38,938 nt of DNA, from contig NC_068985.1 in NCBI RefSeq assembly GCF_001194135.2, positions 108,276,856-108,315,793 on the forward strand, read 5' to 3'. The notes beneath the pieces are model-generated. The model had not been told where the DNA came from. It worked only from the letters and a program-made list of their open reading frames with translations, and ran no database searches. Of this stretch, positions 1-35,051 are shown piece after piece. This DNA is from Octopus bimaculoides (Eukaryota). The translations under genes and the position numbers were made by a program. Every line of letters starts with the position of its first letter. The first letter of the stretch is position 1.

Positions 1-260
1 TAAACTGTCCTCCCCTCTTTTTACACGAGAACATTACTGTGTGATACACGATCCCTATTGATCGGCCTTTCCTTTTCTTTTTTTTTCGATCCCTTTTGAT
101 CGAACTGCCCCTTTTTCCCTTCCTACGATCCCTTTTGATCGACACCACCAATTTTTATTTTTTTATTTTTTTTTTCCTTCCTTCCCCCTCCCAAAAATAA
201 AAGCTCTACATTGTATTTGTCCCATCTTCGTTGAGCCCTGTGTGGCTAATAAAAGAAATG

Positions 261-296
<36 letters not shown>

Positions 297-308
297 CATC
301 TATCTATT
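1..308 (+). mobile_element. Probable 3' end of a non-LTR retroelement ending in a (TATC)n tail
   Basis: Repeated GATCCC..TTGATCG motifs, AATAAA-like signal (taataaaagaaa) directly followed by (tatc)n. Confidence 0.4.
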
Positions 309-327
309 TTTAATCGTTTTTTTTTTA

Positions 328-760
328 CATGCTTCAGTCGTTTGACCACGACCATACTGGGGTACCGGCTTGAAGTGGTTTAGTCGAAGAAATCTATACC
401 AGGAGTAGTACTTATTCTATCGGTCTCTTCTTCCGAGCTGCTAAATTAGAGGAATATCAACACACCAGCACTGGTTATCAAGCAGTGGTGAGGGAAAAAC
501 ACAGACACAAAGACACACATGCAAAGAAACACACACACACACGCACATACACACACACACAAACACGCGCGCACACACACACAGATACACACATGCGACG
601 GTCTTTCAATTTCTGTCTACTAAATCTACTCACAAAGCTTTGTTCGGTCCGAGCCTATAATAGATGACACTTGCCGAAATTTTCATGCTGTGAGACTGAA
701 TCTGGGACCACGTGGTTTGGAAGCGATCTTATTATTACACAGCCACGCCTATATATCTAC
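328..760 (-). mobile_element. tRNA-derived SINE (family A), degenerate
   Basis: Minus-strand head ggcgtggctgtg...ttcagtctcac...ggcaagtgtc, (CA)-rich middle; homologous to 3205-3660. Confidence 0.7.
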
Positions 761-927
761 ATTAATACATGTAATTATTTCCAACATATTAATATAAAAG
801 AAGGAATATTATAAGAAGGATGTTACCATCCTGTTTCAGCAATTTCTATGCAACCTATTTCAGGATCCGTGTACGTGTATTGACAATATCATTATCTATC
901 CATCCATCCATATATATATATATATAT

Positions 928-1482
928 GACGACCGCTCCATCTTGACAGACGATAGCCATCCCATCAACAATCCACACATATCATCACGCAGTACAATCA
1001 CTTCGTTGGTGAGCCCTCAAGTGACTTTGAAGTCCGGCTGCTGAGCGACAAGGTCTACAGCACAGATGACAAATGTTCAGGCCTCTCGATCCTTGCTCGC
1101 TGGTATCTGATTCTAAGGAAACGCCTCTGTGAACCAGCATATGTCTCTTAAGTCCGGGTATTGTTTTACATAACCTTGTGACATATGCCACAGGTCGCTC
1201 TTATGTCAGGTCGCTCTTATAAGTATTCCTGAGCGCTACTGGTAACATGTAATCCAGTACGACCTGTCTCATGGTCGGGTCGTCGGCGACTAAACTGGCA
1301 ACCCCACCAAGCTCGCTTGGTGAGGAGGGTGATTGTTGGCATCTTGCGGGATGAAAAATAAGACTCNNNNNNNNNNTGGTCGGGTCGTCGGCGACTAAAC
1401 TGGCAACCCCACCAAGCTCGCTTGGTGAGGAGGGTGATTGTTGGCATCTTGCGGGATGAAAAATAAGACTCGTCGAAAGGAC
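928..1482 (-). mobile_element. Internally deleted RTE-like LINE (5' UTR-like part joined to C-terminal zinc fingers and 3' UTR)
   Basis: Minus ORF 985-1191 has CHLCCRPCRSAAGLQSHLRAH, typical of RTE C-termini; flanked by (TA)n on both sides. Confidence 0.65.
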
Positions 1483-1800
1483 GTATATATATATATGTAA
1501 CCAGACTGCTAAGTACAATTTAAAATAAAAAATGAAGTAACACTGAAGTGTGCCATTTCTAATGTATAATATTCGAAGGGACAAAAAAAAAGATATTAGT
1601 GGGCTTATATACCAGAGTCTCTTCCACTGATACTTCCACAGAAAACTTCCCTTCGATCTGGAGTAATTTGTCCAAGTCATCCTGTTAGCATGAGTTCTCC
1701 ACTTCAGTTAACGGTTGAAAAGTCTTTTGTATTGAAGCTAAAGAACATCTTTAGGGGAACCATCACATAACAACAGGAGGGCGACAATTAGAAAGATATT

Positions 1801-2020
1801 TGTTATGTCTCAAATACTACCAGTGGCTGTGTGAGCATCTCATCCTCGTCGCCACTGTTATGTCTCAAACTACTGCTATCTAGTACCTTCGGATGATCTC
1901 TACTCAACCGCTACACAACTGCTACTCGACTGCGACTCAACACACCTACCACGGCCAGATTACCTCTATTTACATGTCTTGGGAGATCCTTCTTCTTCGC
2001 CTGGGGGCGTCGACACAACA
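1801..2020 (-). mobile_element. Collapsed Gypsy-type LTR element: 165-bp 5' LTR, PBS, 3' LTR tip
   Basis: TG...CA termini, 5-bp TSD ATATT (1796-1800 and 2021-2025), LTR end GAGACATAACA present twice, PBS TGGCGACGAGGATG at 1854-1841. Confidence 0.85.
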
Positions 2021-2351
2021 ATATTGCGTATCATGATTGACATCATGATTAAGGAAGACAATTAGCTCCCTTTACTATCATATGGTAGAATGTGTTAATG
2101 ATATAATCTCACTCCAATTCGCGCTTGAAACATTATCATCCCAAGTATTGCCAGCTGAAGAGTTATCATCCCAAAATTTACCACTTGAAAGATTATACCT
2201 ATATTTGAAGCTATAATTTCAGTTATATTCTGAAATATAAAACAAATTGTGCATATTATTTTATAATGAATATAATATCCTATCGTTTTATGAAAGGCAA
2301 TCAATATTAATATTAATTTTTGATAAATTGAACGTAATTTGAATCTCGTAC

Positions 2352-2456
2352 CTGCTTGTTTATCAGCCAAAAGAAGGATTTCAATTTGGTTTCTGCATTG
2401 AATATTATCAGTAAAACACAACTTTGACGAACAGTTTAATGGCTTTATTAGGATAA
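2352..2456 (-). CDS. Candidate ITIH exon, start of a divergent C-terminal domain ([V]ILIKPLNCSSKLCFTDNIQCRNQIEILLLADKQA)
   Basis: Very strong polypyrimidine acceptor ttttaccttctttctag, phase 1-1, donor G|gtacga; LCF...IL.L.D...G resembles the ITIH C-terminal pattern. The next exon is unresolved. Confidence 0.5.
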
Positions 2457-3204
2457 CTAGAAAGAAGGTAAAACAGAAAAAGAATTTTGAAATATTATGT
2501 TTTTGCATTTGTTGTATGTTGAGAATACAGACTATACAGACTACACACACCTAAGAAACAAATTATTATGATAATACAAGTAAAATCTTAAAATATTATC
2601 AGCAGAAGGAATAAAATTATAATTTTCTGTAAAACAATTTTAGAACGATTATATTCATTGCTGGTTGTTGCTCAAGTGATTAGCAATAAGTGTAGATGAT
2701 TCGATTATGTAAAAACATAACAGGTTTTACAACCCAATATGCATATGCTATTATTTATACCTCTATAAGTAGTTCGAGATCCAATTCTAAAAATAATTAT
2801 TTTACGTTCTCTCCAAATCATAAATATTTATGGTGTCAAGTTTTTTCTAGAATTAAATGAAAACTCATTACACAATAATATTGGGATATCTTGATTATTA
2901 ACATATGTTGTGCATGTTATGGAGTTTTGAGCTAAGAAGGTTAAGCAAAATTACATCAAGGTTATTCTTAGGGAAGTCGTAACACTTGTGAATCTCTTTC
3001 TTAGTGTTAGCTTAAAGTCTCACAAACAAACCAAAAAATTAATAAAACGCAACCTTGACATGACTGGTATGGCAAATCGAAGTTGCAATAGAGAAAACTT
3101 CTCTTGTGTTATTCATAATTGCCAGTGGTAAAAATTCTTTACCGTGAAGAAATGAGCGCGAATCACATACAATATCATTCTCACCGATTGATGAATATTA
3201 AGAA

Positions 3205-3446
3205 CGACTTTGGTCATTAAGTTGCGGCCGTGCAAAGGCACCGCCTCGAAGGTTATTTCTTTATCCAAATTGACACTGGCACTTTTCTTTCGGTGGGTTT
3301 TCAAGACAGGTATTTATTTTATCGGTTAGTTTTGCCGAACTACTATGTTTCAGGGATAAACAACCAAATACAAGTTGTCAAGTAGTGTGTGTGTGTGTGG
3401 GGGGGGGATTAAAAACTGACACAGACACACACATAAATGCACACGC

Positions 3447-3500
<54 letters not shown>

Positions 3501-3660
3501 AGGTTTCCACACAATTTCCGCTTACCAAGTCCCAATATAAAACATTGGTTGACCTGTTGCTATAGTAGAAGACACTTGCCCAAGGTGTCGTGAAGTGGGG
3601 CTAAACCCAAAACAGAGTGGTTGTAAATCGAGCTTCTTAACTACAAAACCATGGCTATTA
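3205..3660 (-). mobile_element. tRNA-derived SINE (family A), degenerate
   Basis: Shares gacacttgcc, gcggcc.tgc..ggcaccgcct.gaag and tatcgg..tttgccgaac blocks with 328-760. Confidence 0.7.
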
Positions 3661-3826
3661 CAGTATGAAAGTTACTGATAATTTTGAGAATACACACTCC
3701 TTTTCATACTTATTGCTTTGATATCTTTTACGAGACTTTTTGAATCACAAACTGGAGATTAATATCTTTAAAAGCAAGTAAATAAAGAAATATTTCATAA
3801 ATGAAATGAAGTTCATGTTTTCTTAC

Positions 3827-3892
3827 CAGGACTGCGGGGAAGAGGTGGTAATTCTCTTGCTGGAGCTGTGTTAGGAACTCTGTTTGAAGGTG
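3827..3892 (-). CDS. ITIH: ITIH Pro-rich linker exon, 66 nt, phase 1-1 ([A]PSNRVPNTAPARELPPLPRSP)
   Basis: attgttttag|CA...CCTG|gtaaga; GC-rich island in AT-rich DNA, open in phase 1. Confidence 0.85.
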
Positions 3893-4637
3893 CTAAAACA
3901 ATATAGTTCGATTTGAGTTTAAAGCAATATTATAACAATTTAAAGCTTATTCAATATGAAAAAAGAACGGAAAACTTTACTTTCGGATGAGACCATTTTT
4001 CGAATAGAGCATCCATTTAGATTTAACACTAAATTCCTGGACAAGGCATAATAGACATTGAAGTCATTTTGGGTGCCCAATGATGTTTCCTAGAAAAGAC
4101 ACATATCTACTCAAAATGAAATATCGTTGAAATTAGACTACACTGTTAATGCTAAAATATATTTCATCTGCCTCATAACAATAAATACAGTAGCCCTGCT
4201 TAAAATTATTTACTGCATGTTATGTAGCCCATCGTTATGCAGCGGTGTCTCTTGTTATGTGGTATTCCTGAGAAATGACATTTGAAGTGCATGTCATTTA
4301 AACTGTTACATAAGAAGCAAACTGTAAGAAAAGCTGTGAAAATATTACAAAATCATTATTGCTTATTTCTGTTCTATCTTCATATATTATAATACTTCCC
4401 CTAATGTAATATTTAAGATTTACATAATTTTTCAGGAATTGCATTAAGAGAATACATTTAAACAAATTACACAGGCCAACAATAATTCTTTTTCTCTGAT
4501 ATCAAAAACTTTGGAACCGAAATGAAAGTTTTTCACACAAAGGTCCAAAAATGAATATTCTATTCGCGAAAGGTAATGAAAAGTATGTTTAGCCGGAAAA
4601 AACAGTCAAATTAAAATTTTCTCAGCACATGGATCTC

Positions 4638-4678
<41 letters not shown>

Positions 4679-4693
4679 AAAGTATCTACATAC

Positions 4694-4708
4694 CCACTCT
4701 GTTAGGAT
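4694..4708 (-). CDS. ITIH: ITIH linker microexon, 15 nt, phase 1-1 ([H]PNRV)
   Basis: tttcatttcacttacag|ATCCTAACAGAGTGG|gtatgt; paralog of 9633-9647. Confidence 0.8.
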
Positions 4709-5371
4709 CTGTAAGTGAAATGAAAATTTCATATAGTTATGAAAATATCAAATATAAAAATATTTATGTTAACACATATCTAAAAAATAATGAATAGATT
4801 TATTACATAGTTTTGAAAATATATAATATTCAATATTTACATTAATCTCGGCAGTTAATAGAGTTATAATTTAATTGCAAAGAACAATTAAAAAGAAATT
4901 TTACTAAACGACCAGCTGTCTTACATGTTCATTGTAGTTGTTCTGCATTATTTAATTGGAGATAAAATAAGGTGGTAAATTTTGTCTACATATGTCAGCA
5001 TTTTCCCTTCCAATTGATTCCTCCACAACAAATAAAAGTTAATAGAATTTTAATTTACCTTAATAAAGTAAGAAACTACAGCTTACATATTGAAAAACAG
5101 TATTCATTTAGAGCTATATGAAAAACATAATATATCTGAACTTAATTACTATGATTATACTGGCAAAAACATAATGCCAATGTCTCTCGATTTATACAGC
5201 AATCTGTTTTCACAGATTCATTTTATTAGGATTTTGGTTTTGGTCTATATTGACAAAGATAACATTTCAACGTGTACGTTTGAATTTTTAAATAAGAAAT
5301 AAGAGGTTATGTTGTTACTTATGAAACAAATGTTATTTGCCAAACATGTATCTTTGAGTAATGCGATAATC

Positions 5372-5405
<34 letters not shown>

Positions 5406-5726
5406 NNNNNNNNNNNNNNNNNNNNNNNNNNNNNNNNNNNNNNNNNNNNNNNNNNNNNNNNNNNNNNNNNNNNNNNNNNNNNNNNNNNNNNNNNNNNNNN
5501 NNNNNNNNNNNNNNNNNNNNNNNNNNNNNNNNNNNNNNNNNNNNNNNNNNNNNNNNNNNNNNNNNNNNNNNNNNNNNNNNNNNNNNNNNNNNNNNNNNNN
5601 NNNNNNNNNNNNNNNNNNNNNNNNNNNNNNNNNNNNNNNNNNNNNNNNNNNNNNNNNNNNNNNNNNNNNNNNNNNNNNNNNNNNNNNNNNNNNNNNNNNN
5701 NNNNNNNNNNNNNNNNNNNNNNNNNN

Positions 5727-5758
<32 letters not shown>

Positions 5759-6663
5759 TGCTATTCATCTAAAGAATATACCATTTGCATTCTACAAAAA
5801 GTATTTGCAAAGTATTGAATAATCATTCAGTTTAATCAAAATTGTTTTAAATTATTCCTTGAAGATATATAATGTCACATTATATATTTGGTGATTATCC
5901 TAGTAAAGCTAATTTTCAAAATGCCTATCTATCCAAATTTCCTTGTTCCCCAACACCAACGAAAAGCATATGTAGTTGTCATATTAATTTATCTTAGATA
6001 ATGTCATTATAGAAACCACGGCACACATGCAGAACAACGGATAGCGCACAATAAACCTAAACTTATTTTCCGTGATCATTCTGACAACAGAGCAATGCAG
6101 TTGTCTCTTGGTTTACAAGTCAGTAGACTTGCATAATTTAATTTTAGTAGTGCCTTGGTTTCAATTGATTTTGAAATGTGATTTTACCTACACAGACACA
6201 TTTAGTCGTCAACGTTTCGTTTTATTCTTTCAATTTTTTTTCTACCTCTCAACTTTCGTTTCAGTTTATCAATAATGAGAAAGTCTACACGCTCAAATAA
6301 CAATCAACATTTTTTCCCTATACTTTGAGATTGAAAACTAGTTTGAAATGTTAAACCAGAACAGAAAGGAACGTATTTCTGGAAAGAAACATGAAAATAT
6401 TAAATCAACTTCGAAAGATAAAATAAAGGTTCGATAAAAATGGGTAAACTTCGGACTGTATGTCTGTTTTGAAAATTTATAATTATATTAAACACATAAT
6501 TGCTCCATTCACATGTTATTTAGACTTAAACCAGGAGTCCTTGAACCAATCTACTGTGTAAACCAAACGACCACTGCACGGTTATTTTTAGAAGGAAGTT
6601 GAATTTACGGGGGAAAATATGAGAGCTATGAACATTGGCTTTGTACAGAATATTGTTACTCAC

Positions 6664-6681
6664 GTTGCTGAAACAAATGAT
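6664..6681 (-). CDS. ITIH: ITIH linker microexon, 18 nt, phase 1-1 ([D]HLFQQ)
   Basis: ttctctttttcag|ATCATTTGTTTCAGCAAC|gtgagt; paralog of 10665-10682. Confidence 0.8.
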
Positions 6682-6984
6682 CTGAAAAAGAGAAAAAAAA
6701 ATTAAAGAAATATTGTAGAATTTATTACATCCTGTTATAGAAAACATACTAGACTTCCCAGCGCGAGTGATATTTTACATAACTAAAACCATAGAGATTG
6801 ATAGTCGGGCGTAATGTTAGTTGCCCAGAGAGGGCAGTCAAATTAACACAGGCATACTCCTATATACACATGCACGCGCGCATCAGAACATGAGAGACTC
6901 TGATATTACATATGAAAGAATTCTTGTTTGCCAAACTCATATTTGTGAATATTGAGAGAAATTATATGTTTAATATAAATTCAT

Positions 6985-7131
6985 AAGTATTCTTTTCTAC
7001 TCTAGGCACAAGGCAACTGGTACTTAATTTATCAACCCCGAAAGAATAAAAGGCAAAGTCGAACTCGGTGGAATTTGAACTCAGAGCGTAAAGACATGAA
7101 ATATCGCTAAATTCTGCCAGCCTGCCGCCAT
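6985..7131 (-). mobile_element. tRNA-derived SINE (family B), internally deleted
   Basis: Reverse complement of the 7424-7638 copy (gagttcaaattcc, gactttgcc, gataaattaagtaccagttg, ccttgtgcctagagtagaaaagaa). Confidence 0.8.
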
Positions 7132-7423
7132 ATAAATGTATAAATATTACGTTGATAAATGACTGAAAGCGCTCAAGGAATTTGTCATACTTTTAAACAT
7201 TTTCAGAAAATTCTTGCGAATTTGTATTCTACATGTAAGAATTAATACGATTATGCAAAAAAAAACAAAACTAAACAAAACAGAACAAAAACGTCTTTGA
7301 GGCGTAATTTAAGAGCTACTCAACTGTCATTTTTTGTACATCTCACGACCACCTCATACATTCCTCGTTTATTTGACTGTCAGACGTATTTGTGTTTTTC
7401 AATATTTTTCGCCCCACATGAGA

Positions 7424-7638
7424 TGGCGAGCTGGCGGAAACGTTAGCACGTCGGGCGAAATGCTTAGCGATATTTCGTCTGTCTTTACGTTTTGAGTTCA
7501 AATTCCGTCGAGGTCGACTTTGCCTTTCATCTTTTCGGGGTCGATAAATTAAGTACCAGTTGCGTACTGGAGATCGATCTAACCGATTGGCTCCCTCCCC
7601 CAAATTTTGGTCCTTGTGCCTAGAGTAGAAAAGAACAT
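7424..7638 (+). mobile_element. tRNA-derived SINE (family B)
   Basis: Head gagctggcggaaacgttagc...gagttcaaattcc (A/B-box-like); homologous pieces at 6985-7131 and 11590-11628. Confidence 0.8.
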
Positions 7639-8239
7639 CTTTCACCCCATAAACATATTTAAAGATCTTTTAGAGGGATTTAAGTAAAAAAAATTGGGAC
7701 TGTCCGTATATTAAACTGTGATTCTAAAAAAAAATTTCTAAAAATTACAAAAAAGTTTTCCATAGTCGTGTGAATTCCCGCATGTAGGAAAAAAGTTCGC
7801 AAAAGTTTTCCAAAAATTCTAAACAATAAAAAAGTTATGAGTGGTTATATGGCATGTTTAAAGCAGTATTCCGCCAATTAAAGTACCCCAAGGTTACGGC
7901 GAGATCCTTAAATATAGAATATGTGTAGTGGTTATTCTTTCCTTTTCACCCACTTTTCCTGGTAACTTCCCTTCACTCTTTCTGTCGCTTTTCCTAAATA
8001 ACTCGAGTCTTGCGGATAAAACCACTACCGGCAGCCACCTTGCATTCTGTGCAATCTATTATGAAAATTACTTTGCTCTGCGTCGGATTATTATTTAGAA
8101 TTTGGATATGAATCTGAAAATTATATAAAATTTATACAGATGTTATAATTTATATGAAAGTATTAGCATTAAATATCTATTATTTATCTATATTATCTTA
8201 AAGAAAATTATTTTATGTTTTGCTTCCTCATATAGTGTG

Positions 8240-8607
8240 GAGGCGTAATGGCCCAATGGTTAGGGCAGCGGACTCGCGGTGATAGGATCGCGGTTTCGAT
8301 TCTCAGACCAGGCGTTGTGAGTGTTTATTGAGCGAAAACACCGAAAGCTCCACGTGGCTCCAGCAGGGGGTGGTGGCGAACCCTGCTGTACTCTTCCACC
8401 ACAACTTTCTCTTACTTCCTGTTTCTGTTGTGCCTGTAATTCAAAGGACCAGCCGTGTCACGCTGAATATCCCCGAGAACTACGTTAAGGGTGCACGTGT
8501 CTGTGGAGTTCTCAGCCACTTGCACGTTAACTTCACGAGCAGGTTGTTCCGTTGATCGGATCAACTGGAACCATCGTCGTCGTAAGCGACGGAGTAACAA
8601 CAACAAC
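8240..8607 (+). mobile_element. tRNA-derived SINE (family C) with (AAC)n tail
   Basis: A box tggcccaatgg, B box ggtttcgattct, GC-rich body, ends gtaacaacaacaac. Confidence 0.8.
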
Positions 8608-8977
8608 CTCATATAGTATATGCTCTCGTAAGAGTTTTCGGTTGCATAATTGAGTTCGTAACAATTGTTAGAATATAAATATGTACTTAACGAAAGTAGT
8701 ATATTTGACAAGTCATTCGTGATACAGCTATTACAATGTAAATCGAATTTGATTTATTTCCGAGGTGGGGGGGCATACAAAACAAAAACAAACTCCACGT
8801 TATCAACATTATACCAGTATGGATAATATTGCTCATTTTAAATCTAGATAAAATTGAAATGGAGAAAACATTACGAAAACACCTAATACAACGTAATTTT
8901 AATGTTTAAGGGATTTTAATGAAGTTGTCAGCTGTCTTTCACATAAACAAAAAATCCCAGATCTTAGTTCAATGCTG

Positions 8978-9538
8978 GGATCTTTTTTAAAACGGGGGCC
9001 ACATTTTTCATTAATGTTTTACGTAGTGTTTTTGGTACCGAAAGACTTTCAAACTTCGTATACTTATCTATTTTGTGTTATAGAACAGAAAAATATTTTT
9101 GTATTCGAATTTATTTCATGTAAAAAATTGTGTTATTTCGATAATTTCAACCAATCACTGATGTCCATTCAGCCGATATACATTAAGTGCCGACTACATA
9201 AACAAACGATTCTTCGTTTTATTTGCTTTTTTCATTTTAAATTTGCTTTAACCCTAACCTTAACCCTAACCCTAACCTTAGGGTTAGGGTTAGGGTTAAT
9301 TGTTTCAGAATCGTTTGTTTATGTAGTCGGCACTTAATGTATATCGGCTGAATGGACGTCAGTGATTGGTTGAAATTACAGAAATACGACAACTTTAACA
9401 TGGAATAATTTATGGATTTCTCTTTTTTTTAAAGAAGACTAAGAGAAAAAGATGTTTTATATGACACATTCTACCAGTGTTCCAAGTTTCAAAGTGTTTC
9501 GTTAATGAAAAATGTGGCCCCCGTTTTAAAAAAGATCC
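8978..9538. mobile_element. Fold-back MITE with a telomere-repeat centre and 8-bp TSD
   Basis: TIR ggatcttttttaaaacgggggccacatttttcattaa at both ends, caatgctg at 8970-8977 and 9539-9546, arms complementary around a (CCCTAA)n/(TTAGGG)n switch near 9280. Confidence 0.9.
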
Positions 9539-9632
9539 CAATGCTGTTTAAATGAGAGTGCATCTTGCTAAGGTTGGTTAGGATTAATTTATCATACGCA
9601 TACAGAAAATCTACGTAAAAATATCTACATAC

Positions 9633-9647
9633 CCAATACGGTAGTAC
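9633..9647 (-). CDS. ITIH: ITIH linker microexon, 15 nt, phase 1-1 ([R]TTVL)
   Basis: ttctattactgttacag|GTACTACCGTATTGG|gtatgt; paralog with the same sites at 4694-4708. Confidence 0.78.
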
Positions 9648-10664
9648 CTGTAACAGTAATAGAAAATTAATTTAGTTATGGAAATATCAGATTTGTAAAT
9701 ATTTATGTTAATATATATCTAAAAAGAAAGGAATAGATTTATTACATAATTTTCAAAGTATACAATATTCTATATTTATGTTAAAGTAGTAAATAATAGT
9801 TGTAATATAGCTCTATAGAATTATGGAAAAGTTAATTTATTCAAGCGGTCAGCTGTCTTTCATATTTATTATAGATGTTCTACACTATATATTTGTGGAG
9901 ACGCATATTTTAGTGTTTAGAGTTTTAGACTCATGATCGTAAGATTGTGGTTTTGATTACTGGACCGGGCGACGCGTTATATTCTTCAAAACAATTTGTC
10001 TGTTGTTGTCATATTAATCTGCCTTAGATAATGGCTATTATAATGCAGAACAGCAGATTACAATAAGCCTAAACATATTTTTCATTATTGTTCTAACTAT
10101 AGTGTAATGTAGTTGTCTTTCGGTTTACATGTCAGTAAGTTTCATTTTAGTAGTGTTTTGGTTTCAGTCAATTTTTGAAATGTTGTTTTATGCATATAGA
10201 CACAACATTAAGCCGTTAATGTTTTGTTTGTCTTGTAATTGTTCTTCCGTCTCTCTTTCATTTCATTTTATCCGAAACATAGTCTAACTTGAAACCCTCA
10301 TGTTAGAATTTTTTCCTATACTTCTTTAACTATTTTAGAGATTGAAGACTAGAATTTTAAACTTTAAATAAAAAGAGAAAGGAACGTATTTCATGAAATA
10401 AAAATGAAAATATTAAATCATCTTCAAAAGAAGAAAAAGATTCGGTAAAAGACTGAATGTCTTTTTTAAAAAAAATTGATAAGAATACTGAAAGCATATA
10501 TTACTCCATTCTCCCGTTATTTATACTTAAACGGTGAGTCATGAAACTTGTTTACTGTGTAAACCCAAAGACAATTATACATTTATTTTTAGGAGGTTGT
10601 TTAATTTTCGGTTGAAATTATGAGTGCTATGAATCTTGGCGCTGTGTAGAATATTGTTACTTAC

Positions 10665-10682
10665 GTGGGTCAGAGAAATGTG
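10665..10682 (-). CDS. ITIH: ITIH linker microexon, 18 nt, phase 1-1 ([P]HFSDP)
   Basis: ctctctctttcag|CACATTTCTCTGACCCAC|gtaagt; splice sites and length conserved in the paralog at 6664-6681. Confidence 0.82.
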
Positions 10683-10757
10683 CTGAAAGAGAGAGAGAGA
10701 GAAAAAAGATATATTTTAGAATTTATTACACCTTCCTATGGAAAACAAAAGCAAAAC

Positions 10758-11586
10758 GGATCTTTTCCTTTTGATCGGCAGGTCGATAAATTAATTTTTT
10801 TTAACTAAACACTTTCAAACTTCGGATACTGGTAGAATGTGTCATATAGAACATCTTTACTCTTAGCGTTGTTGAGAAAACTTTCTATTTACGAAGCTAT
10901 TTCGTGTTAAAGTTGTCGTATTTCGGTAATTTCAACCAATCAATGACGACGTGTTCAGCTGAATAAAATTACTGCTGTTGTATGTTAACAACAACTTCCG
11001 GCGGTGTATATTTCGTTTGTCACTGTTATTTATGACATATTTCATCTCAGTTACGTTCGTATGAATAAACGAGTGTATCTGAAGCACGTTTACTTCACGA
11101 CACCATCATAATCGTCCGAGCATTTCTACTGCTTTTAGGTTTTNNNNNNNNNNNNNNNNNNNNNNNNNNNNNNNNNNNNNNNNNNNNNNNNNNNNNNNNN
11201 NNNNNNNNNNNNNNNNNNNNNNNNNNNNNNNNNNNNNNNNNNNNNNNNNNNNNNNNNNNNNNNNNNNNNNNNNNNNNNNNNNNNNNNNNNNNNNNNNNNN
11301 NNNNNNNNNNNNNNNNNNNNNNNNNNNNNNNNNNNNNNNNNNNNNNNNNNNNNNATTCTAGAAAATTGCCAAAAATTAAAATTTTGAAATTTTTGCCCCT
11401 CCCCTTCCCCCTTCCCCAATTTCATTATTTTTCCTTTTTTCCGTAACCCTAACCCTAAAACCCCAACCCTAACCCTAAAACCCTAACCCTAACCCTAACC
11501 CTAACCCTAACCCTAACCCTAAAACCCAACCGTAACCCTAAACCCAATCCTAACCCTAAAAATCTAACCCTAACCCTAAAACCCTA
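10758..11586. mobile_element. Related GGATC-starting MITE-like element with an interstitial (CCCTAA)n array, interrupted by a gap
   Basis: Starts ggatctttt, shares aaacactttcaaactt..actggtagaatgtgtc and ttcaaccaatca with 8978-9538; degenerate CCCTAA array at about 11445-11586. Confidence 0.6.
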
Positions 11587-12076
11587 AAGCTAAAGACAGA
11601 CGAAATACCGCTAAGCATTTCGCTCGACAACACCACCATCGGCAGTCGCCTTGAATTCTGTGTGATCTGTGATAAGAATTACTCTCTTTTGGATGAAATT
11701 ATTACCTTCTGTTACACAATGGAGTTTGTAACACTTGTTCAAATACACATATGTCCTTAACGAAAGTAATACATTTGACAAGTTAATTATAATGTAGCTA
11801 CAGCAATCTAAAAAAAAAAAGAATTGATTTATCCCCTCCCCACCGCCCCAAAGTGTGCATGTTACCAATATCATACTATTATGAATAAAATAGCTAATTT
11901 TAAATCTGGGTAAAATTGCAATAGAGGAAACATTATCAAAAACACTCAATAGAATGTAATTTTCATGGTTAAGGGATTCAATACCTATTTTAATACTATG
12001 CATTTTTCAGTGTTCATAAAAATTTTGATGCTATATATATAGATAGAAGTAAAAATAACGAAGCATTTCTACTCAC

Positions 12077-12100
12077 GGATATTCGGGGCGTAATATCCAA
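12077..12100 (-). CDS. ITIH: ITIH linker microexon, 24 nt, phase 1-1 ([F]GYYAPNI)
   Basis: atttcattttacag|TTGGATATTACGCCCCGAATATCC|gtgagt. Confidence 0.78.
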
Positions 12101-12214
12101 CTGTAAAATGAAATATAAAAAAAATGTAACTTAATGTTGATAAAACAGGTTTTTCGCTGATAAAAGTATATATTAACATAAATGAACACTGTATAGTTCC
12201 TAGTTAAAAGTGTC

Positions 12215-14010
12215 GTCTATTACCTTTTGATGTGCATGTTCATACCTCGTATCTATACATCCGGCATAACAGCCAGTGAAGGTTTGGGACCAACTTATCG
12301 TGTCTGCGCAAGACTTTCACAAGCACTAACAATGTGAGTCACGCTCTCGACCCCCTCTCCACACATTGTGCAGAGGTTCGTTTTACTTGCGTGGTATATA
12401 TCCCTTTTTACTGACTTGGCATTCAATGCCTGGTCCTGGGCAGCAATGATTAGGCTTTTAGTCTTCTTTTTTTAGGTCTCCCTTGCTGAGCCACCTCCAT
12501 GGATGCTTCTGGGTCTTTTAATTTGGTAGCTTAACAGTGGAACTGACTATGTAATTCCATGCAGAGTAGGATTTCTTCTCTCTCGTTGGCTATTCGTAAT
12601 TGGAATTCATAAGCACTCTCAAGTCCAATTTTGGTAAATCCTTCTGCATTAGCAGCATACTGTAGGTCTTGTTCGTTGTTTACCAAATATTCTGCTATGT
12701 TTCTCCATTCACTGTTGATGCACTCCGATACGCTAATCAGCCCACGTCCAGCTTTACACCTCTTCATGTAAAGCCTATGTACGTTCGCCTTAGGGTGGAG
12801 GACACCATGTATTGTCATTGTCTTTCGGGGAGTGCGATCGAATTGGTTAATCTCCGCTTGTGTCAGTTTCAGGATTGGTGCTCTATAGTGGACCATAGCA
12901 GCAGCCCATATGTTGATGGCCGTCACAAGGTTCCTGGAGCTTAGTTTTAATTGCAAGAGAAGTTTGAGATCTTGTTTTTCATTTCTTTATGCAGGATATT
13001 GCCTAGCTCCAGGATCCCAAGGTACTTGTACTCATCATCGTCCGGATCTTCCTTTCTGTCTCCGTTTGGCAATTCTTTGCCTCTACAATCTGCGCTTTTC
13101 TCCCGTTTCAAAGTGAGCACCGCACATTTCGAGATACGAATTCCATCCCTATATACTTGCTGCCCATCTGTACAGTCTCAACCAGCCTCTCCACTTCAGA
13201 CTGTTTTTGCGAACAGTTTCAAAACATCCATGAAGAGAAGTGGTTGAGACGAGGACCGTTCTTTCTCAGCTCATAGTGCACGTTAATTTTACGTAGGACA
13301 AAAGAAAGTGGGATCAAGGCTGTAACAAATAGCAAAGGTGAACGAGAGTCTCATTGAAAGATACTTCTTTTGATTGTTACCTCGGCTAAATGCTATTTGT
13401 TACAGAAAAGACGTGTTTTCAAACTAGCCATGATGTTCTTAATCAGTGCACACACGTTTTCAGCTATTCCACACATGTCAAGTGTTTCCCAAATTCACGA
13501 ATGCGGCAACTTGTCGTAAGCATTTTAAAATTCTATCCAGGCCATGCACAAGTATTTTTGGTATCGTTTGTAGTTCTTTATTACAAAAGGTCACTTGTGC
13601 CCTTGGTTCTTTTACAGCATCCCTTTTGTTCTATTGGAAGTAGATTGTTTTCCGCAAGGAACGTATATATTTTCCCTGTGAGGATACCTGTTAACACTTT
13701 CTATAAAAGGTTAAGACAGGCAATGGGTCAGTAGTTGCCAGTCTCATTGCCCTTTGTCCGATCTTTCATCAACAATGTTGTCTTCCCCTTTAGAATCCGC
13801 TCTGCCTAATTGCACCACTCTATCTAATAGCAACGGAGTTCGCTTGTGTGTTTACCTAAACCACTCGAGTCAGTAGCCATGAATTCCTCTGGTCCTGCCG
13901 CTTTTCATTTTGGCAGTTTAAAATAAGTTGCATTTATACACTGGAGTTAGTTGGATTTCCTATACCACTTCCCTAACAAAACTGGTCTTGTGCTTCATGG
14001 CCATTACAAC
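12215..14010 (-). mobile_element. Degenerate RLE-type non-LTR retrotransposon (R4/Dong-like), RT to CCHC region
   Basis: Frameshifted motifs KAAGP, KGKTTLLMKD, PIACLNLL, EQKGC, FMDVLKLFAK, YKYLGILE, LHPKANVHRLY..R..GRGL, ESVTHIVSAC. Confidence 0.9.
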
Positions 14011-14198
14011 GCAAAATAACAAGCAAGCAAATATCCTAGCTACAAATGCAATGCAAAATAAGTCGTCAGTTTTATGAATGACTTGAAGTGGTTTTTGAAA
14101 GAGATCATATAGTATAGCTATTTCAATCCAAATTTTAATATACAAATCCAAATTTTAATATGCATATATAATAACAGTCCAAATTTTAATATACTTAC

Positions 14199-14225
14199 AT
14201 GGACGTAGAGATGGTAAAGATTTTT
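14199..14225 (-). CDS. ITIH: ITIH linker microexon, 27 nt, phase 1-1 ([E]KSLPSLRP)
   Basis: tttcttttccattgtag|AAAAATCTTTACCATCTCTACGTCCAT|gtaagt; open, frame-preserving. Confidence 0.75.
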
Positions 14226-16571
14226 CTACAATGGAAAAGAAATACATTGAAAATTGTAATAACGGTCTCGAAGTAACATTTTTAGTATAACATAGTAGAA
14301 TATAACGAAACTGTGCCAGCAGAGGTATCAATTTTAGAGAAAACTTTATAATTTTTTTTTAACAATTTCCTAAATATAACAATTTTTCCTTATTTAGGGT
14401 ATAATGTATGATACATACTAAGACAGTAATTAGACTGAAAATGTTTGCTAGATCATTCTAAAATACAATCAATGTAGTATTATATATATATTGTCAAAAT
14501 AAATTCTGTAATTAGTTATTGCTATATTGCATAGCACGTACAATTTAATTACATATATAGCAGGAATATTTAGTAATCGAACCCAGATCACAATATCCCT
14601 TGCAAAAAAAAAACAAAAAAAACTGCAACTCAAGTATGCGATTGCAATGCGCTAGAACATTCTTACGTCATCAAAATTTCTGATCATTCATGATTTTGTA
14701 TCAAACCAGATGTGACATCAATTATATCTTTGGGGTGTTTTTTCTGAGCAGTATATATTCAACGTTATATTCAGCGCATTTTGGTCACTACCGAGAGACG
14801 GTGGATGGCAGACATCAGAAGACGGCAGTCAGAGGACAGAAGCAGAAACAGCAGACAGTTAGAGTGTTGTCACAATACAAAAACAATGGACGTGGGCAAC
14901 AGCAACAGTGATAAAATAACATCAAGGAACTATCCACAGCAACGACCAAGATCAATAACCTTCGATCTATCTCAGTGTTTGACGTACGTGGTAATAGCAA
15001 TATCGTTTTGTTTACGATAGAAGTAAATATTTTTCTGTCAAAATCTCGAACTCAATTCGGTGTTCTTTATCGTAACGTATGTGAACATCAACATATGTGA
15101 CCATGAACATATGTGACCAAATTACATTTTCAGCCCAGAAAAAGTTTCATTAAGTAAAGAATACAAAGCGCTCAGAAGGAAAAATAAGAGAAGAATAAAG
15201 AAATTGTGAAATTACAATTTGTTTTATTCCAGTACCGTTAAGTTGCTTATCTCTCAGTCGTTTCTGTTGATGTTTAATATGATGAACACAGACTTAGTGA
15301 GATAGATCACTGAGGTGTGGACGGAGTCGTTATGTGTTGTTGAGAAAAAGATTACCCATATTACAATGCCTAACAGTACAAATGCTACTGACCGAGCATC
15401 AGCTCTAGTAGAGGTTGTGATGATATACCAGTTGGGGAAAATTAGGTAGCTAGAATAAGAGAAGTAAGCAGAATATGTGAAATAAATATATGAAATGCTT
15501 TGGCCCGCCCAGAAACTTCAGCAATTATTTAAACGTATTGCAAGATCTTGTGTTTATGGTGTCTAAAGCCATCGTAATATTGGAAAACTTTTTTCTTCCA
15601 CCAGCAAATATTCCAGGGTCTGAAGCATTTCACTTTTTTGCCTGCACATTTCGCCTGTGTGGGACAACAAAGACTCGATTAGCCTTTGCCTGCAGCCTGT
15701 TGTCAACCCAAATCCTTTGAGCTTGTTTAAGCTGCCATACTTGTCTATTTGGTGGCTTTCATTAATTGTGATCTGTGATCTCTGCTTATGACTTATAACT
15801 AGATTTCATAGATGAACTAGAGTAACTATGGTAAGATAGATCTTTGAGTGTTACTTTAAGTATAAAGCTTTAAGTATAAAGGCAATATACCGTGTTTATA
15901 TATGAGCAAATGAAATTAGATGAAACTTACTAAAATAACTTTAAATTGTTGTTTTCAAACTATTCAGTCAGAAAATAATTCTATGATTATAATGTAATTT
16001 TCTAACGATTATATACAAATGAATTTATGTTTTTTATGTTTCTAAATCTAAATCTGGAAAATTTCGTTTTATCTTTTGCATTTATTACTAATTTTAAAAG
16101 CTTAAAAGCAGAATATTAAATAAACCATCAATCATATCACATGAAATTTTCATTGTGTTTCAAGAATTAATAGGCGCATTAAACCCCCCCACCAAAAAAA
16201 AAACATTGTTTTCCAAGAAAGTTTCTTAAATTCATTACATTTTATCCATAATTTCTACAGGTTATATTAGTTTTCCTGATTTAAGCGAAAATACTATGAA
16301 ACGAAATCTAGTATATTTGAGCTAAATTTTTTAGATTAATCATTGCGGAGTTGAACGTTTGATACCTAGTACTTATCGCATGGCAATCATGGATACATTT
16401 AGATAATGATAACATATAGTTTTAGATTTTATGATATAAACAATCATAAAAAAATCTTTTGTTATGATTGATTGGTTGAAAGACGTATATGGTAAAGTCA
16501 TCTCAGTTTAATTATTTCGTTATCATGACCTCAGGAGCTTGTCATTAAAGTGGTATGAATGATAAAATTAC

Positions 16572-16644
16572 CTTCTTCAAACAGTTCTTCATTCACTTTG
16601 TATTTAGTGACAACCATTGATGTTAATGGAGTTACGAAATTATA
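16572..16644 (-). CDS. ITIH: ITIH exon 8 (YNFVTPLTSMVVTKYKVNEELFEE)
   Basis: Family hallmark FVTPLTSMVVT; tcacag|TAT acceptor, G|gtaatt phase-1 donor. Confidence 0.96.
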
Positions 16645-16750
16645 CTGTGAAAAACAAGAATATTAGTTTCAGGACAACAGTAGTATTAATAAGGAAACTA
16701 TACATGAAATATTTCCATCATCGACATTACATTTCTTACATTTAGATTGC

Positions 16751-16752
<2 letters not shown>

Positions 16753-16803
<51 letters not shown>
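16753..16803. repeat. (TAT)n microsatellite
   Basis: Direct sequence. Confidence 0.95.
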
Positions 16804-16804
<1 letters not shown>

Positions 16805-16859
16805 GAAGACTTCAAGAATTGTGAAAATAACCAAGGTTGTAGAGTAATCAAGTAAATGT

Positions 16860-17175
16860 AATACTACATGGTGGAAAGGTGAGCTGATTAGGGTTGGTCG
16901 TAGCGTCCTTGTTTTTCCTCTTTCCCCCACCATCGGTCTGCAAGGAGGGTTCTGCCAGCATCTTCAAAGAAGGCCGTTGCCCGGACGGCGTAGTGACGTC
17001 AGTCTTTGCAGTCAATCACAAGAACAATCTGCTGGCGGTGATCAACGTGATAGAGGCCAAGAGATTTGTTTAGAGAGTTCTTGTACATCTTCTTCGGCGA
17101 TCCTCTATCATGGTGAGCAGAGGAGAGTTAATCACAGAGCGTGATCTTAAAAAGTCGATGATCCGCATCCTTGAC
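16860..17175 (-). mobile_element. RTE-like LINE C-terminal fragment
   Basis: Translates as GSPKKMYKNSLNKSL...AFFEDAGRTLLA...PNQLTFP, matching the RTE G.PKK.YKD.LK.SL...FE pattern. Confidence 0.65.
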
Positions 17176-17281
17176 TATCGTAAATGTTCTTTAGCAGAGT
17201 TAGAACAGTAACTATTAAGAAATAAATCATATGTTTTAAAATAATGAAAATATAATTTATCATAACGTCCTTTGTACTCAC

Positions 17282-17973
17282 CTTTAGAGCCAAAGTAAGA
17301 ATGGCATGTCGTACTTCTTCCTCCTTTCTGTCTTCCATGAGAAGTTGTTTCAAGGTGAGGTAAACATAAGTCTTTTCAGTAATTTCAGAAAGTGACTGAA
17401 TACTAGTCAAACTTGAATCTTCCGAAAAACGATCATCGTATATGGTAAAGTCATCTCCATATAATTTTAATTCTAATATTTCGTTATTAAAACCCCAGCA
17501 GTTTGTCATTGCAAAACTCACATTTATAGTTGGTCGGTATTCTTGCGGCAAAACACCGGAAACAACTAATTCTGATCCTTTGAAGTAGTTGCTAAATGAC
17601 GTAGAACTAGTTTTAACAGCAACATCTAAGTAAACAAATGTAATATCTTTTAATACAATGTTAGATATTTCTTTATAAAGATTTTCAATTTGAAGTTTAC
17701 TGTCAGCATCTAAATAAATCTTCCTATTGAAGCCTCCGTTTTCTGTGGCGAGCTCACGAAGAAATTTACTGTCACAATCACCTCCAAAACAAAGGGTAAA
17801 TAATGAAATATCTTGGTTGGATTCTCTGACATTTTTCTTGATATGTTCGAAGTTAGTAACATCTTCTGTTGGATCTCCGTCAGTGAGAAATACGATGATA
17901 CTTTTCTTTGTGGGGTTTAAAGCTGGCTTGTGTTTGTCTATACTTTGAAGGAGAGCAGCGTTAATATTTGTAC
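17282..17973 (-). CDS. ITIH: ITIH exon 7, vWA C-part and following region
   Basis: 692-nt open exon: TNINAALL, IVFLTDGDPT, ELATENGGF.RKIY, YFKGSELVVSG, YLTLKQLL; ttcag|GT acceptor and AAG|gtgagt donor. Confidence 0.97.
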
Positions 17974-18823
17974 CTGAAGAAATAGTAAAATTACACTCTC
18001 AGAAAAAATAGCAGAATGTTTGTACACATAAGCAATTAAGGTCAGTGATACAAACTTAATAGGAAAGCAGCATTGACGTATAATTTTAAGTTAAGCGTAA
18101 CCAAATCTTTTGGTCTGAAAAGAAGATGAATTTAAACATAAAATGTTAAAATATGGAACTATTTTAAAATGCTTAATCAACGTACCAGGTCAATAACAAG
18201 ATTAAAAGTTCTATGATACATATAGCACAGTAGTACGTAGTAATAGGATTTTTAAAATATAGACATGGAGTACCACTGTCAAATATTGACATATTTTAAC
18301 ATTCTGTGTAATAGTATATACAATATCAATAGTGTAGGAAAAAGAGTGCCATACTGAAGAGGAAAATATAAATTAATGAAAGCTACTGCAAAGCTGGTTT
18401 GAGTCCAAATAGAAGGAAATTGTATCGTAACTTCAAGTTGTGAAACAATATTGCGTAACTCAGTGTTTCACTTAAACCTGTGCCATCACTTACGCTGATA
18501 TATTATACCTAATACATATGAGAAAAAAAAAGAAAGCATGGTAGCAGAACAGCATCATCCTTATCTTCAAGACGAGGAACATAAAATGATAATTTAGAGA
18601 CTAAAGAAAGATAAGTGTGCAGCAAAAAAACGAGCTTTGACGATAATTTGAACTATACATCCATAAACTCACGATTTTAAAATTAAAACTATCCCTAAGT
18701 CTTCTTCGTCAATATAATCTATTAAAATTTTCTAATAAATTATAAAGCAATGTAAATTTTGGAAATAGTTTCAAACTCACAAACAAAATTCGATAAATAT
18801 TTTCTAATTTTTGTTTAACTCAC

Positions 18824-19112: not shown

Positions 19113-19852
19113 CTGAAAATTTTGAAGAGAAAACATTAATCGATGTTTGATTTAATATTTTAGAGAAAAGTAGTCCAACTAATATTTAGTATGAGATAGA
19201 GTCACAATATACAAGCTACTAAATATATTGTGATTATCGTCCTGTCATTAGAACAGAAATAGATTTGTTTATGTTAACAACAGAATAAAAAATAATTCGT
19301 TGTGCAGTTTGGAATACCAGTATGAACCTTTGATTAATTCTCTTACCTTATCCAGAAAACACATATTTATGTGTCTTTTTGATATGTTCAGAAACCTTCA
19401 CTCCATTTTAAGTCCCATTGTATTCGAAGTTCTTTGGAGTTAGTTATATAAATTTGCTTAAAGTTGTGTCTCTGCTAAATTTTAAAGATGTTACTTATCT
19501 AATGAAAACGGTTTATTGCTAAACACTCTACAGCTTCTACGTTTTTAACATCATCATTGTAGAAGTTGTTACCGCTATTCCCCATGACAGTCTCTTGAGG
19601 TTTAAACAATTGATTGGTGAACCTTTTATCCTGCAGGGAATATATTAACTATTTTTCTCTCAGAACAACAACAACTATCTAGTTAATTAATCGACATAAT
19701 ACGTTCTACCATTAACTTACTCATGCCCGCGGATAAATAAACTAATTACTCCATTTTCTAGATCTTTCGTACTTCTACCTTAAAGCATATTGTCTTACGA
19801 TCCTCATTTCAATTGACGTCGTCCATCTCTCTCTCACTCTCTCGTGTGTATG

Positions 19853-34910: not shown

Positions 34911-35051
34911 GAATTACATCTAAATTAAAGTATATCTTTCGCACACACATACCTGCGTGCTTTTAGAAGTAGCGAAACATTGCAGCGTTACAGAAAATAC
35001 AAAGTTAGTAAAAGTCACTCACCCACTATATTTCAGTGCATATACATACAT

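What the first reader, a model, noticed from the sequence alone, without database searches (positions are those of the whole stretch)
4683..10750. Microexon pair tandemly duplicated, with exons diverging faster than flanking introns and only non-synonymously
Seen: an [18-nt exon, intron, 15-nt exon] module exists twice. The exons are 11/18 and 9/15 identical (61% together), whereas adjacent intron blocks are 38/46 and 51/57 identical (blocks chosen by eye, so biased upward). Eight of nine internal codons changed amino acid (HFSDP vs HLFQQ, TTVL vs PNRV) and none differs only synonymously, while lengths, phases and splice sites are kept. Inference: diversifying selection on the linker, as expected in a protease-bait arms race. 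The sample is tiny.
Basis: partly seen in the sequence, partly recalled or inferred. Interest (0 to 1): 0.8.

Follow-up and report, generated by a model that had tools for sequence, protein, structure and literature searches.

The report
Duplicated microexon pair in ITIH linker
An intron of an inter-alpha-trypsin-inhibitor heavy-chain-like gene holds two old tandem copies of a pair of tiny candidate exons (18 and 15 bases) whose coding letters have changed more than the surrounding intron; this hints at a fast-evolving protease-sensitive linker, but the window alone cannot prove it.

Summary
The duplication is real. Three collinear blocks (A 4679-8915, B 9618-11978) each hold an 18-nt and a 15-nt candidate exon on the minus strand. 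All four keep AG/GT sites and are phase 1-1. They lie in the phase-1 intron after the FVTPLTSMVV exon of a VIT+VWA (ITIH-family) gene, the position of the protease-susceptible region of human ITIH4.

The exon identities (11/18, 9/15) and the lack of synonymous-only codons are confirmed. The intron figures were too high: unbiased identity is 78% ungapped (72% with gaps), and the directly adjacent flanks are 77-80%. The excess exon divergence is marginal (p about 0.02-0.12, chosen post hoc), and differences fall 4/6/3 over codon positions.

No transcript or orthologue was reachable, so exon use is untested. The two 18-nt sites are the only ones of their splice-signal strength in 349 kb scanned.

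Independent support: a paralogue in another animal carries, in the same intron, 4-7 tandem cassettes of 24-39 nt. All lengths are multiples of 3, only the required frame is open, and the cores are the least conserved part of the repeat unit.

Verdict: probably real, fast-evolving linker cassettes. Diversifying selection is plausible but unproven. The gap at 5406-5726 is intronic, inside a (TA)n tract, and touches no exon.

The parts
16572..16644 (-). Exon YNFVTPLTSMVVTKYKVNEELFEE|G of the ITIH-family gene. It ends in phase 1 (donor G|GTAATT) and so fixes the frame that any downstream cassette must keep.
   Evidence: aligns to human ITIH4 up to residue 597
17282..17998 (-). Large VWA-domain exon (open frame 17150-17998; donor after ...LTLALK at 17282, phase 0).
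10665..10682 (-). Candidate microexon B18 (18 nt, phase 1-1, ..HFSDP..). The 20 nt before the acceptor AG are all pyrimidines; donor GTAAGT.
9633..9647 (-). Candidate microexon B15 (15 nt, phase 1-1, ..TTVL..). Acceptor TTACAG, donor GTATGT.
6664..6681 (-). Candidate microexon A18 (18 nt, phase 1-1, ..HLFQQ..). 18 of the 20 nt before the acceptor AG are pyrimidines; donor GTGAGT.
4694..4708 (-). Candidate microexon A15 (15 nt, phase 1-1, ..PNRV..). Acceptor TTACAG, donor GTATGT. Homology between the copies ends about 15 nt after this donor.
4679..8915 (-). Duplicated unit, copy A. Alignable blocks are 4679-4958, 5971-6746 and 8637-8915; the rest is copy-specific insertions and the assembly gap.
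9618..11978 (-). Duplicated unit, copy B. Alignable blocks are 9618-9895, 10001-10747 and 11707-11978. It is interrupted by a palindromic element and the gap 11144-11354.
5406..5726 (.). Assembly gap inside a (TA)n microsatellite, in the intron between A18 and A15. It touches no candidate exon.
8976..9540 (.). Palindromic (MITE-like) element with a telomere-like (CCCTAA)n/(TTAGGG)n core. It sits at the junction between copy B and copy A.

Best explanation
The window carries the 5' two-thirds of an ITIH-family gene (signal peptide, VIT, VWA, FVTPLTSMVV motif) on the minus strand. In the long phase-1 intron after the FVTPLTSMVV exon, a segment of 2.4 kb or more was duplicated in tandem. The segment holds two symmetric (1-1) microexons of 18 and 15 nt. 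The duplication is old, with about 22% intron divergence.

Both copies kept their splice sites, lengths and phase, so any combination of the four microexons stays in frame. I take them to be real cassette exons. They would add 5-22 residues (for example A-HFSDP-R-TTVL-D-HLFQQ-H-PNRV) to the exposed linker that corresponds in position to the protease-susceptible, bait-like region of human ITIH4.

Amino acids in the cassettes have turned over at or above the neutral rate. The likely mechanism is linker diversification by cassette duplication followed by replacement of almost every residue. Variants would be produced either by including both pairs or by alternative use of them.

Shown: the duplication, the gene identity, the phase compatibility, the strength of the splice signals, and the divergence figures. 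Inferred: that the sites are spliced, that the linker acts as a bait, and that selection rather than drift drove the changes.
For: Gene identity. VIT and VWA score above the Pfam cut-offs. The best solved-structure match is human ITIH4 at 5e-51, aligned up to the FVTPLTSMVV motif.

Frame. The upstream exon ends in phase 1. All four candidates are multiples of 3 and open in that frame.

Splice-signal strength. Sites with at least 90% pyrimidines in the 20 nt before the AG, then AG, 9-36 nt and a GTRAGT/GTATGT donor occur twice in 349 kb scanned (both strands of the window and 7 other loci). Both are the 18-nt candidates.

Divergence. Exons are 20/33 identical against 958/1228 for intron (p 0.018). 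Ten of 11 codons are replaced and none is synonymous-only.

Intron age. Homologues L004, L005, L009 and L012 have the same phase-1 intron after the same exon.

Independent parallel. The paralogous locus L004/L007, and its 95-96% identical sister contig L006, carry tandem cassettes in that intron (units 1.2-1.9 kb apart). Each cassette is ATGAGTGATTTCTTTTTTTCAG | core | GTAAGTCTCTT. The cores are 39, 27, 24, 33, 27, 27 and 24 nt, all multiples of 3. They have 0 stops in the required frame, against 1 and 4 in the other two frames, and they encode Pro/Gly/Ser-rich peptides. The core is the least conserved 24-column window of the whole repeat unit (0.48 against a mean of 0.76). The 10 core differences between the sister contigs are all non-synonymous or fall in a split codon.
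Against: No transcript, EST or orthologue of this gene could be reached, so splicing of the four sites is unverified.

The flanks of the candidates are no better conserved than the rest of the duplicated intron. There is therefore no sign of purifying selection on splicing signals beyond the core dinucleotides. Fifteen of 16 core splice positions are identical, which has p about 0.10 at 78% background identity (my calculation).

Differences are spread 4/6/3 over codon positions, as expected for unconstrained DNA.

The significance of the excess divergence is marginal, post hoc, and disappears (p 0.115) if gap columns count as differences.

No ITI_HC_C/DPHF exon was found in the 16.5 kb downstream within the window, so the gene model is open-ended. 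Read-through of the FVT-exon donor would end the protein after 12 codons.

The cassettes of the paralogue share no sequence with those of the window. The between-contig test there is not significant (p 0.08).
Confidence: 0.55

Rival explanations
1. The four 'microexons' are not exons. A piece of intron that happened to contain two splice-like motifs was duplicated, and everything has since drifted neutrally. The lower identity inside the 33 nt is sampling noise that was noticed after the fact.
For: The exon-versus-intron difference is p 0.02-0.12 and post hoc. About 10% of random 15- or 18-nt intron windows are as diverged or more. Flanks are not specially conserved. Codon-position spread is 4/6/3. 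Twelve microexon-like sites pass a looser filter on the gene strand, so weaker look-alikes do occur. No downstream coding exon is found in the window.
Against: The two 18-nt sites are the only ones of their signal strength in 349 kb. All four have lengths that are multiples of 3 and are open in the one frame dictated by the upstream exon. All four AG/GT pairs survived 22% divergence. A paralogue shows frame-preserving cassettes in the same intron.
Confidence: 0.3
2. The microexons are real, but the linker is simply unconstrained (disordered). Amino acids drift at the neutral rate and there is no positive selection or arms race.
For: Differences are spread evenly over codon positions. The excess over intron divergence is marginal. 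Only length, phase and splice sites are kept, which is what a spacer needs. The human ITIH4 protease-susceptible region is also reported as highly variable among species (PMC7793589).
Against: Drift cannot exceed the neutral rate, yet exon divergence is 39% against 22% in the intron and dN/d(intron) is about 3. In the paralogous array the cores are far more diverged than the 88-94% identical flanks.
Confidence: 0.3
3. The duplication is an assembly artefact, for example two haplotypes or a collapsed repeat placed in tandem around gaps.
For: Two gaps (5406-5726 and 11144-11354) lie inside the duplicated units. A clear artefactual 95-nt perfect duplication flanks the 10-N gap at 1367-1376.
Against: The copies are only 70-78% identical, with different transposon insertions. 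That is far too diverged for haplotypes or an assembly duplication.
Confidence: 0.03

Closest known systems
Tandem arrays of alternative (mutually exclusive) exons encoding the bait-like region of invertebrate thioester proteins and alpha-2-macroglobulins: Biomphalaria BgTEP2 (12 exons), Chlamys CfTEP (6), Drosophila Tep2, shrimp A2M (PMC7016707)
   Same: Tandemly duplicated homologous exons of the same phase, in the protease-exposed segment of a protease-binding protein. The encoded peptides vary in sequence and length.
   Different: The protein family differs (VIT+VWA ITIH, not A2M/TEP). The exons here are microexons of 15-18 nt (24-39 nt in the paralogue), not full bait exons. The window has only two copies, each made of two exons. 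Alternative use is documented by transcripts in the TEPs and is untested here.
Human ITIH4 protease-susceptible region (Pihl et al. 2021, PMC7793589)
   Same: Same family and the same position in the protein, directly after the FVTPLTSMVV motif that ends the conserved N-terminal part. The paper describes the region as bait-like and highly variable among species.
   Different: The papers I read report no exon-array or microexon architecture for ITIH4. Inhibitory function of the gene in the window is not shown. [quoted passage not shown]
Tandem exon duplication in general, and accelerated-evolution genes whose introns are better conserved than their exons (snake venom PLA2, conotoxins). This comparison rests on my own knowledge and is not checked against a paper.
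   Same: Exon bodies are more diverged than the neighbouring intron between duplicated copies.
   Different: In those cases the effect rests on hundreds of sites and many genes. Here it rests on 33 nt in the window.

Membership tests
ITIH (inter-alpha-trypsin inhibitor heavy chain) family | N-terminal VIT domain | tested here: met
   Pfam PF08487, 42.1 bits (cut-off 26.5), on the concatenated exons.
ITIH (inter-alpha-trypsin inhibitor heavy chain) family | VWA domain followed by the conserved ...FVTPLTSMVV... segment | tested here: met
   Pfam VWA, 60 bits. phmmer to human ITIH4 (9c4f) at 5e-51 and to ITIH1 (6fpy) at 2e-39, aligned through FVTPLTSMVV.
ITIH (inter-alpha-trypsin inhibitor heavy chain) family | C-terminal ITI_HC_C domain / DPHFII site | tested here: inconclusive
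   Not found on the minus strand between 1 and 16571 by Pfam, by motif search or by PDB search. It may lie beyond the left edge of the window. The homologues L005, L009 and L012 have it 1-4.7 kb after the FVT exon.
Tandemly duplicated cassette exons | Two or more adjacent homologous exons with the same length class and phase and intact splice sites | tested here: met
   18/18 and 15/15 nt, all phase 1-1, AG and GT kept in all four, homologous flanks.
Tandemly duplicated cassette exons | The segments are actually included in mRNA, constitutively or alternatively | not testable with these tools
   The protein collections searched hold no transcript or orthologue of this gene: the best hit is 59% identical and genomic.
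Bait-region exon arrays (TEP/A2M type) | The array encodes the protease-cleaved, exposed segment | tested here: inconclusive
   The position corresponds to the segment just after ITIH4 residue 597, where I place the ITIH4 protease-susceptible region (PMC7793589). Cleavage of this protein is not tested.
Bait-region exon arrays (TEP/A2M type) | Exon cores hypervariable relative to conserved flanks | tested here: inconclusive
   Window: 61% against 78%, p 0.02-0.12. Paralogous array L006: the core is the least conserved window of the unit, 0.48 against 0.76, with flanks 88-94%.
Positively selected sequence (dN/dS > 1) | Non-synonymous rate significantly above the synonymous or neutral rate | tested here: inconclusive
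   pN 0.48 against pS 0.07 on 11 codons, Fisher about 0.03 and dependent on half a synonymous change. dN/d(intron) is about 3. Codon-position spread is 4/6/3.

The most novel reading that the evidence does not exclude
In some molluscs, including the animal this window comes from, ITIH-family genes have turned the old phase-1 intron after the FVTPLTSMVV exon into a nursery of tandemly duplicating, hypervariable microexon cassettes. These cassettes build or diversify a protease-susceptible linker. That would be a third inhibitor family, after serpins and A2M/TEPs, to diversify its bait through exon arrays, and the first to do so with microexons.
Probability: 0.3. Interest if true: 0.75.

Novelty: new variant of a known kind. 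Interest (0 to 1): 0.5.

Why it matters
If the cassettes are spliced, this gene and the paralogue with a 4-7-copy array would show bait diversification by exon duplication arising independently in the ITIH family, whose inhibitory role was recognised only in 2021. They would also show that exons as small as 15-39 nt can serve as the unit of duplication and diversification. That gives a concrete and cheap test system: look for junction reads, then cleave recombinant linker variants with host and pathogen proteases. If the cassettes are not spliced, the finding is an ordinary intronic segmental duplication.

Tried and rejected
- Search for the rest of the gene in the window. Pfam scan of all minus-strand open frames of 25 aa or more from 1 to 17200, a DPHF motif search and a PDB search of the three-frame translation of 1350-4720 found nothing.
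- Search for a third, older copy of either microexon module with nhmmer profiles found none. The 18-nt and 15-nt modules are not related to each other or to the extra candidates at 12077 and 14199.
- Search for transcripts or orthologues. Three protein searches gave only genomic exon-sized open frames, at most 59% identical. The window shares no intron or repeat DNA with any fetched locus.
- L001 is an intron-poor ITIH-like copy with a frameshift. I hoped it would reveal a spliced linker, but its sequence after ...ELLEE is not informative.
- Extra conservation of splice-site flanks as evidence for function was rejected. The flanks equal background.
- The between-contig (L006 against L007) excess of cassette differences is only p = 0.08, so it is not used as proof.
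- Gap-optimised pairwise alignment of the short cassette cores inflates their identity. I rely instead on the multiple alignment of whole units.
- ARAGORN found no tRNA in the window.
- Pfam gave no hit above the curated cut-off for four transposon-like open frames I tried.
Full report
**What the window is**

The window is AT-rich animal DNA full of microsatellites and small transposons, with six assembly gaps. On the minus strand it carries the 5' part of an ITIH-family gene:
- a signal-peptide exon near 30.2 kb;
- VIT exons near 23.2 and 22.9 kb;
- an exon near 21.3 kb;
- two VWA exons, near 19.1 kb and at 17282-17998;
- a 73-nt exon at 16572-16644 encoding YNFVTPLTSMVVTKYKVNEELFEE.

Pfam scores VIT and VWA above their cut-offs on the joined exons. 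The best solved-structure match is human ITIH4 (9c4f, 5e-51), aligned exactly up to the FVTPLTSMVV motif at residue 597, and the next is ITIH1. The 16572-16644 exon ends ...GAA GAA G|GTAATT, which is phase 1. Nothing resembling the ITIH C-terminal domain or its DPHF motif lies between position 1 and 16571 on this strand. The gene either continues beyond the left edge of the window or lacks that domain.

**The observation**

Self-BLAST shows three collinear homologous blocks:
- A 4679-4958 = B 9618-9895 (75.5%);
- A 5971-6746 = B 10001-10747 (70.6%);
- A 8637-8915 = B 11707-11978 (70.5%).

This is a tandem duplication whose units are A 4679-8915 and B 9618-11978. The units are separated by a palindromic element (8976-9540) and are differently loaded with insertions. 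There is no third copy.

On the minus strand each unit contains pyrimidine tract-CAG | 18 nt | GTRAGT and, further on, TTACAG | 15 nt | GTATGT. The corrected coordinates are B18 10665-10682, B15 9633-9647, A18 6664-6681 and A15 4694-4708. Homology between the copies stops about 15 nt after the donor of the 15-nt segment.

In the frame set by the upstream exon the two modules read A-HFSDP-R-TTVL and D-HLFQQ-H-PNRV. Ten of 11 codons differ and none differs only synonymously.

**The gap**

The 321-N gap (5406-5726) lies between two (TA)n runs, in the intron between A18 and A15 and about 700 nt from the nearest candidate exon. No reading frame crosses it. The blocks on either side map in the same order and orientation to copy B, so the join is plausible. 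Copy A has about 1 kb here where copy B has about 105 nt, so the content of the gap is unknown.

**Is the excess exon divergence more than chance?**

A global alignment of all three blocks gives intron identity of 958/1228 = 78.0% in ungapped columns and 71.6% when gap columns are counted. The directly adjacent flanks are 37/46, 45/57 and 44/57, which equals background. The best-conserved 40-nt windows lie elsewhere in the unit.

For 20/33 exon matches:
- binomial p = 0.018 against 78%, and 0.115 against 71.6%;
- Fisher p = 0.020;
- about 10% of intron windows of 15 or 18 nt are at least as diverged, giving a joint p of about 0.03.

Nei-Gojobori counts are Nd 12.5 of 25.8 sites and Sd 0.5 of 7.2 sites (Fisher about 0.03). 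In a neutral simulation with 13 random substitutions, 1.5-4% of runs give 10 or more replaced codons with no synonymous-only codon. The differences fall 4/6/3 over codon positions, which is what unconstrained DNA would give.

But the signal rests on 33 nt, was chosen after looking, and is only nominally significant.

**Are the microexons real?**

No transcript or orthologue was reachable. The closest protein in the collections is a 59% identical genomic exon.

Intrinsic evidence is moderate:
- All four segments are multiples of 3 and open in the one frame the upstream exon allows.
- All AG/GT pairs survive. By my calculation, 15 of 16 core positions being identical has p about 0.10 at 78% identity.
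- Signal strength is exceptional. Sites with at least 90% pyrimidines in the 20 nt before the AG, then AG, 9-36 nt and a GTRAGT/GTATGT donor occur only twice in 349 kb scanned (both strands of the window and seven other animal loci). Both are the 18-nt candidates.

Weaker look-alikes exist on the gene strand (12 sites at 75% pyrimidines or more). They include 12077-12100 (24 nt) and 14199-14225 (27 nt), which are also phase-compatible.

**Comparative evidence**

Homologous VWA exons from other animals all end at the same ...LALK| boundary. In L004, L005, L009 and L012 the FVTP exon ends in phase 1 at the same place. In L005, L009 and L012 the next exon, 1-4.7 kb on, starts in phase 1 and carries DPHFIV. 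The intron is therefore old, and its ancestral state has no cassettes.

One paralogue (P0003, 47% identical; contig ctg109155c of ENA sample ERZ21867824; loci L004/L007) has a tandem array in this very intron, with units 1.2-1.5 kb apart. Each unit holds ATGAGTGATTTCTTTTTTTCAG | variable core | GTAAGTCTCTTCT...AATCTGGAATAAATTGC. An older diverged copy lies 430 nt after the FVTP exon.

A second contig from the same sample (L006) is 95-96% identical in collinear parts and has seven cassettes. Their features are:
- Core lengths are 39, 27, 24, 33, 27, 27 and 24 nt, all multiples of 3.
- The frame dictated by the upstream exon has 0 stops in 60 codons, against 1 and 4 stops in the other two frames.
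- The peptides are Pro/Gly/Ser/Tyr-rich: GPLPKYFW, APPGSYY, GPPGSPGSSH and others.
- In a multiple alignment of whole units the core is the least conserved 24-column window (0.48 against a unit mean of 0.76), with 150-nt flanks 88-94% identical.
- One copy has CTG instead of CAG and a decayed downstream flank, as expected for a dead cassette.

Between the two contigs the cores differ at 10/123 positions. Nine fall in complete codons and all change the amino acid; the tenth falls in a split codon. The flanks differ at 147/3043 positions (p = 0.08). This array shares no sequence with the cassettes of the window. It is a parallel case, not a homologue.

**Interpretation**

The most economical reading has four parts:
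- Some molluscan ITIH-family genes have acquired small symmetric cassette exons in the intron that follows the conserved N-terminal body.
- These cassettes multiply by tandem duplication.
- Their coding cores turn over quickly while their splice signals are kept.
- The window shows a two-copy, two-exon instance of this.

The position corresponds to the segment of human ITIH4 that follows residue 597. Pihl et al. describe a protease-susceptible region in ITIH4 that acts as a bait and varies strongly among species (PMC7793589). Exon arrays that encode hypervariable bait regions are established in molluscan and arthropod TEP/A2M genes (PMC7016707).

I could find no report of such an arrangement for ITIH. 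One full-text search combining ITIH and microexon returned nothing relevant.

What remains inferred:
- that the sites are spliced;
- whether the pairs are included together or alternatively;
- whether the turnover is adaptive or merely unconstrained;
- whether the protein is a protease inhibitor at all.

**Verdict**

My probabilities:
- real cassette exons: about 0.6-0.65;
- adaptive diversification in this window: about 0.3;
- chance pseudo-exons: about 0.3;
- assembly artefact: negligible.

Noticed in passing
L004:14949-20191, L007 (same contig, reversed) and L006:4511-14571 (minus strand): A paralogous ITIH-like gene in ENA sample ERZ21867824 has a tandem array of 4 (L004/L007) or 7 (L006) microexon-like cassettes in the intron after its FVTPLTSMVV exon. 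The flanks are near-identical. The cores are 24-39 nt, all multiples of 3, and open only in the required frame.
   Followed up: yes
window 12077-12100 and 14199-14225 (minus strand): Two further microexon-like sites (24 and 27 nt, phase-1 compatible; peptides GYYAPNI and KSLPSLRP) lie between the FVTPLTSMVV exon and the duplicated module. They are unrelated in sequence to the module.
   Followed up: partly
window 16530-16571 (minus strand): If the donor at 16571 is not used, the frame runs on for 12 codons (GNFIIHTTLMTSS) to a stop, and an ATTAAA follows about 20-25 nt later. This would give a short VIT+VWA-only isoform or gene end.
   Followed up: no
window 1272-1366 and 1377-1471: A perfect 95-nt direct duplication flanks the 10-N gap at 1367-1376. 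This is almost certainly an assembly artefact.
   Followed up: no
window 8976-9540; also 10795-10948 and 11479-11522: A palindromic MITE-like element has 39-nt perfect terminal inverted repeats and a telomere-like (CCCTAA)n/(TTAGGG)n centre. Pieces of a second copy lie next to the gap 11144-11354, only about 110 nt upstream of microexon B18.
   Followed up: partly
window 6990-7110 and 7464-7635; 11580-11628: Two copies of a SINE-like repeat lie in inverted orientation (88% identical) inside copy A. A fragment of the same repeat lies in copy B.
   Followed up: no
window 8240-8330: This stretch looks like the tRNA-derived head of a SINE (ggcccaatggttagggc...ggtttcgattc), but ARAGORN does not call a tRNA anywhere in the window.
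   Followed up: partly
window 19844-20344: A tandem duplication of about 250 nt (86.6% identical), rich in (GTAT)n-like repeats, lies in the intron between the exon near 21.3 kb and the first VWA exon.
   Followed up: no
L001:9415-11101: An ITIH-like copy from the same ENA sample has VIT, VWA and FVTP segments contiguous, without the introns seen in the other loci, and has one frameshift near 10000. It may be a retrocopy.
   Followed up: partly
window 12298-13177 (minus), 31159-31748 (minus), 33866-34963 (plus): Long open frames look like transposon remnants. Pfam gave no hit above its curated cut-off for the ones I tried.
   Followed up: partly
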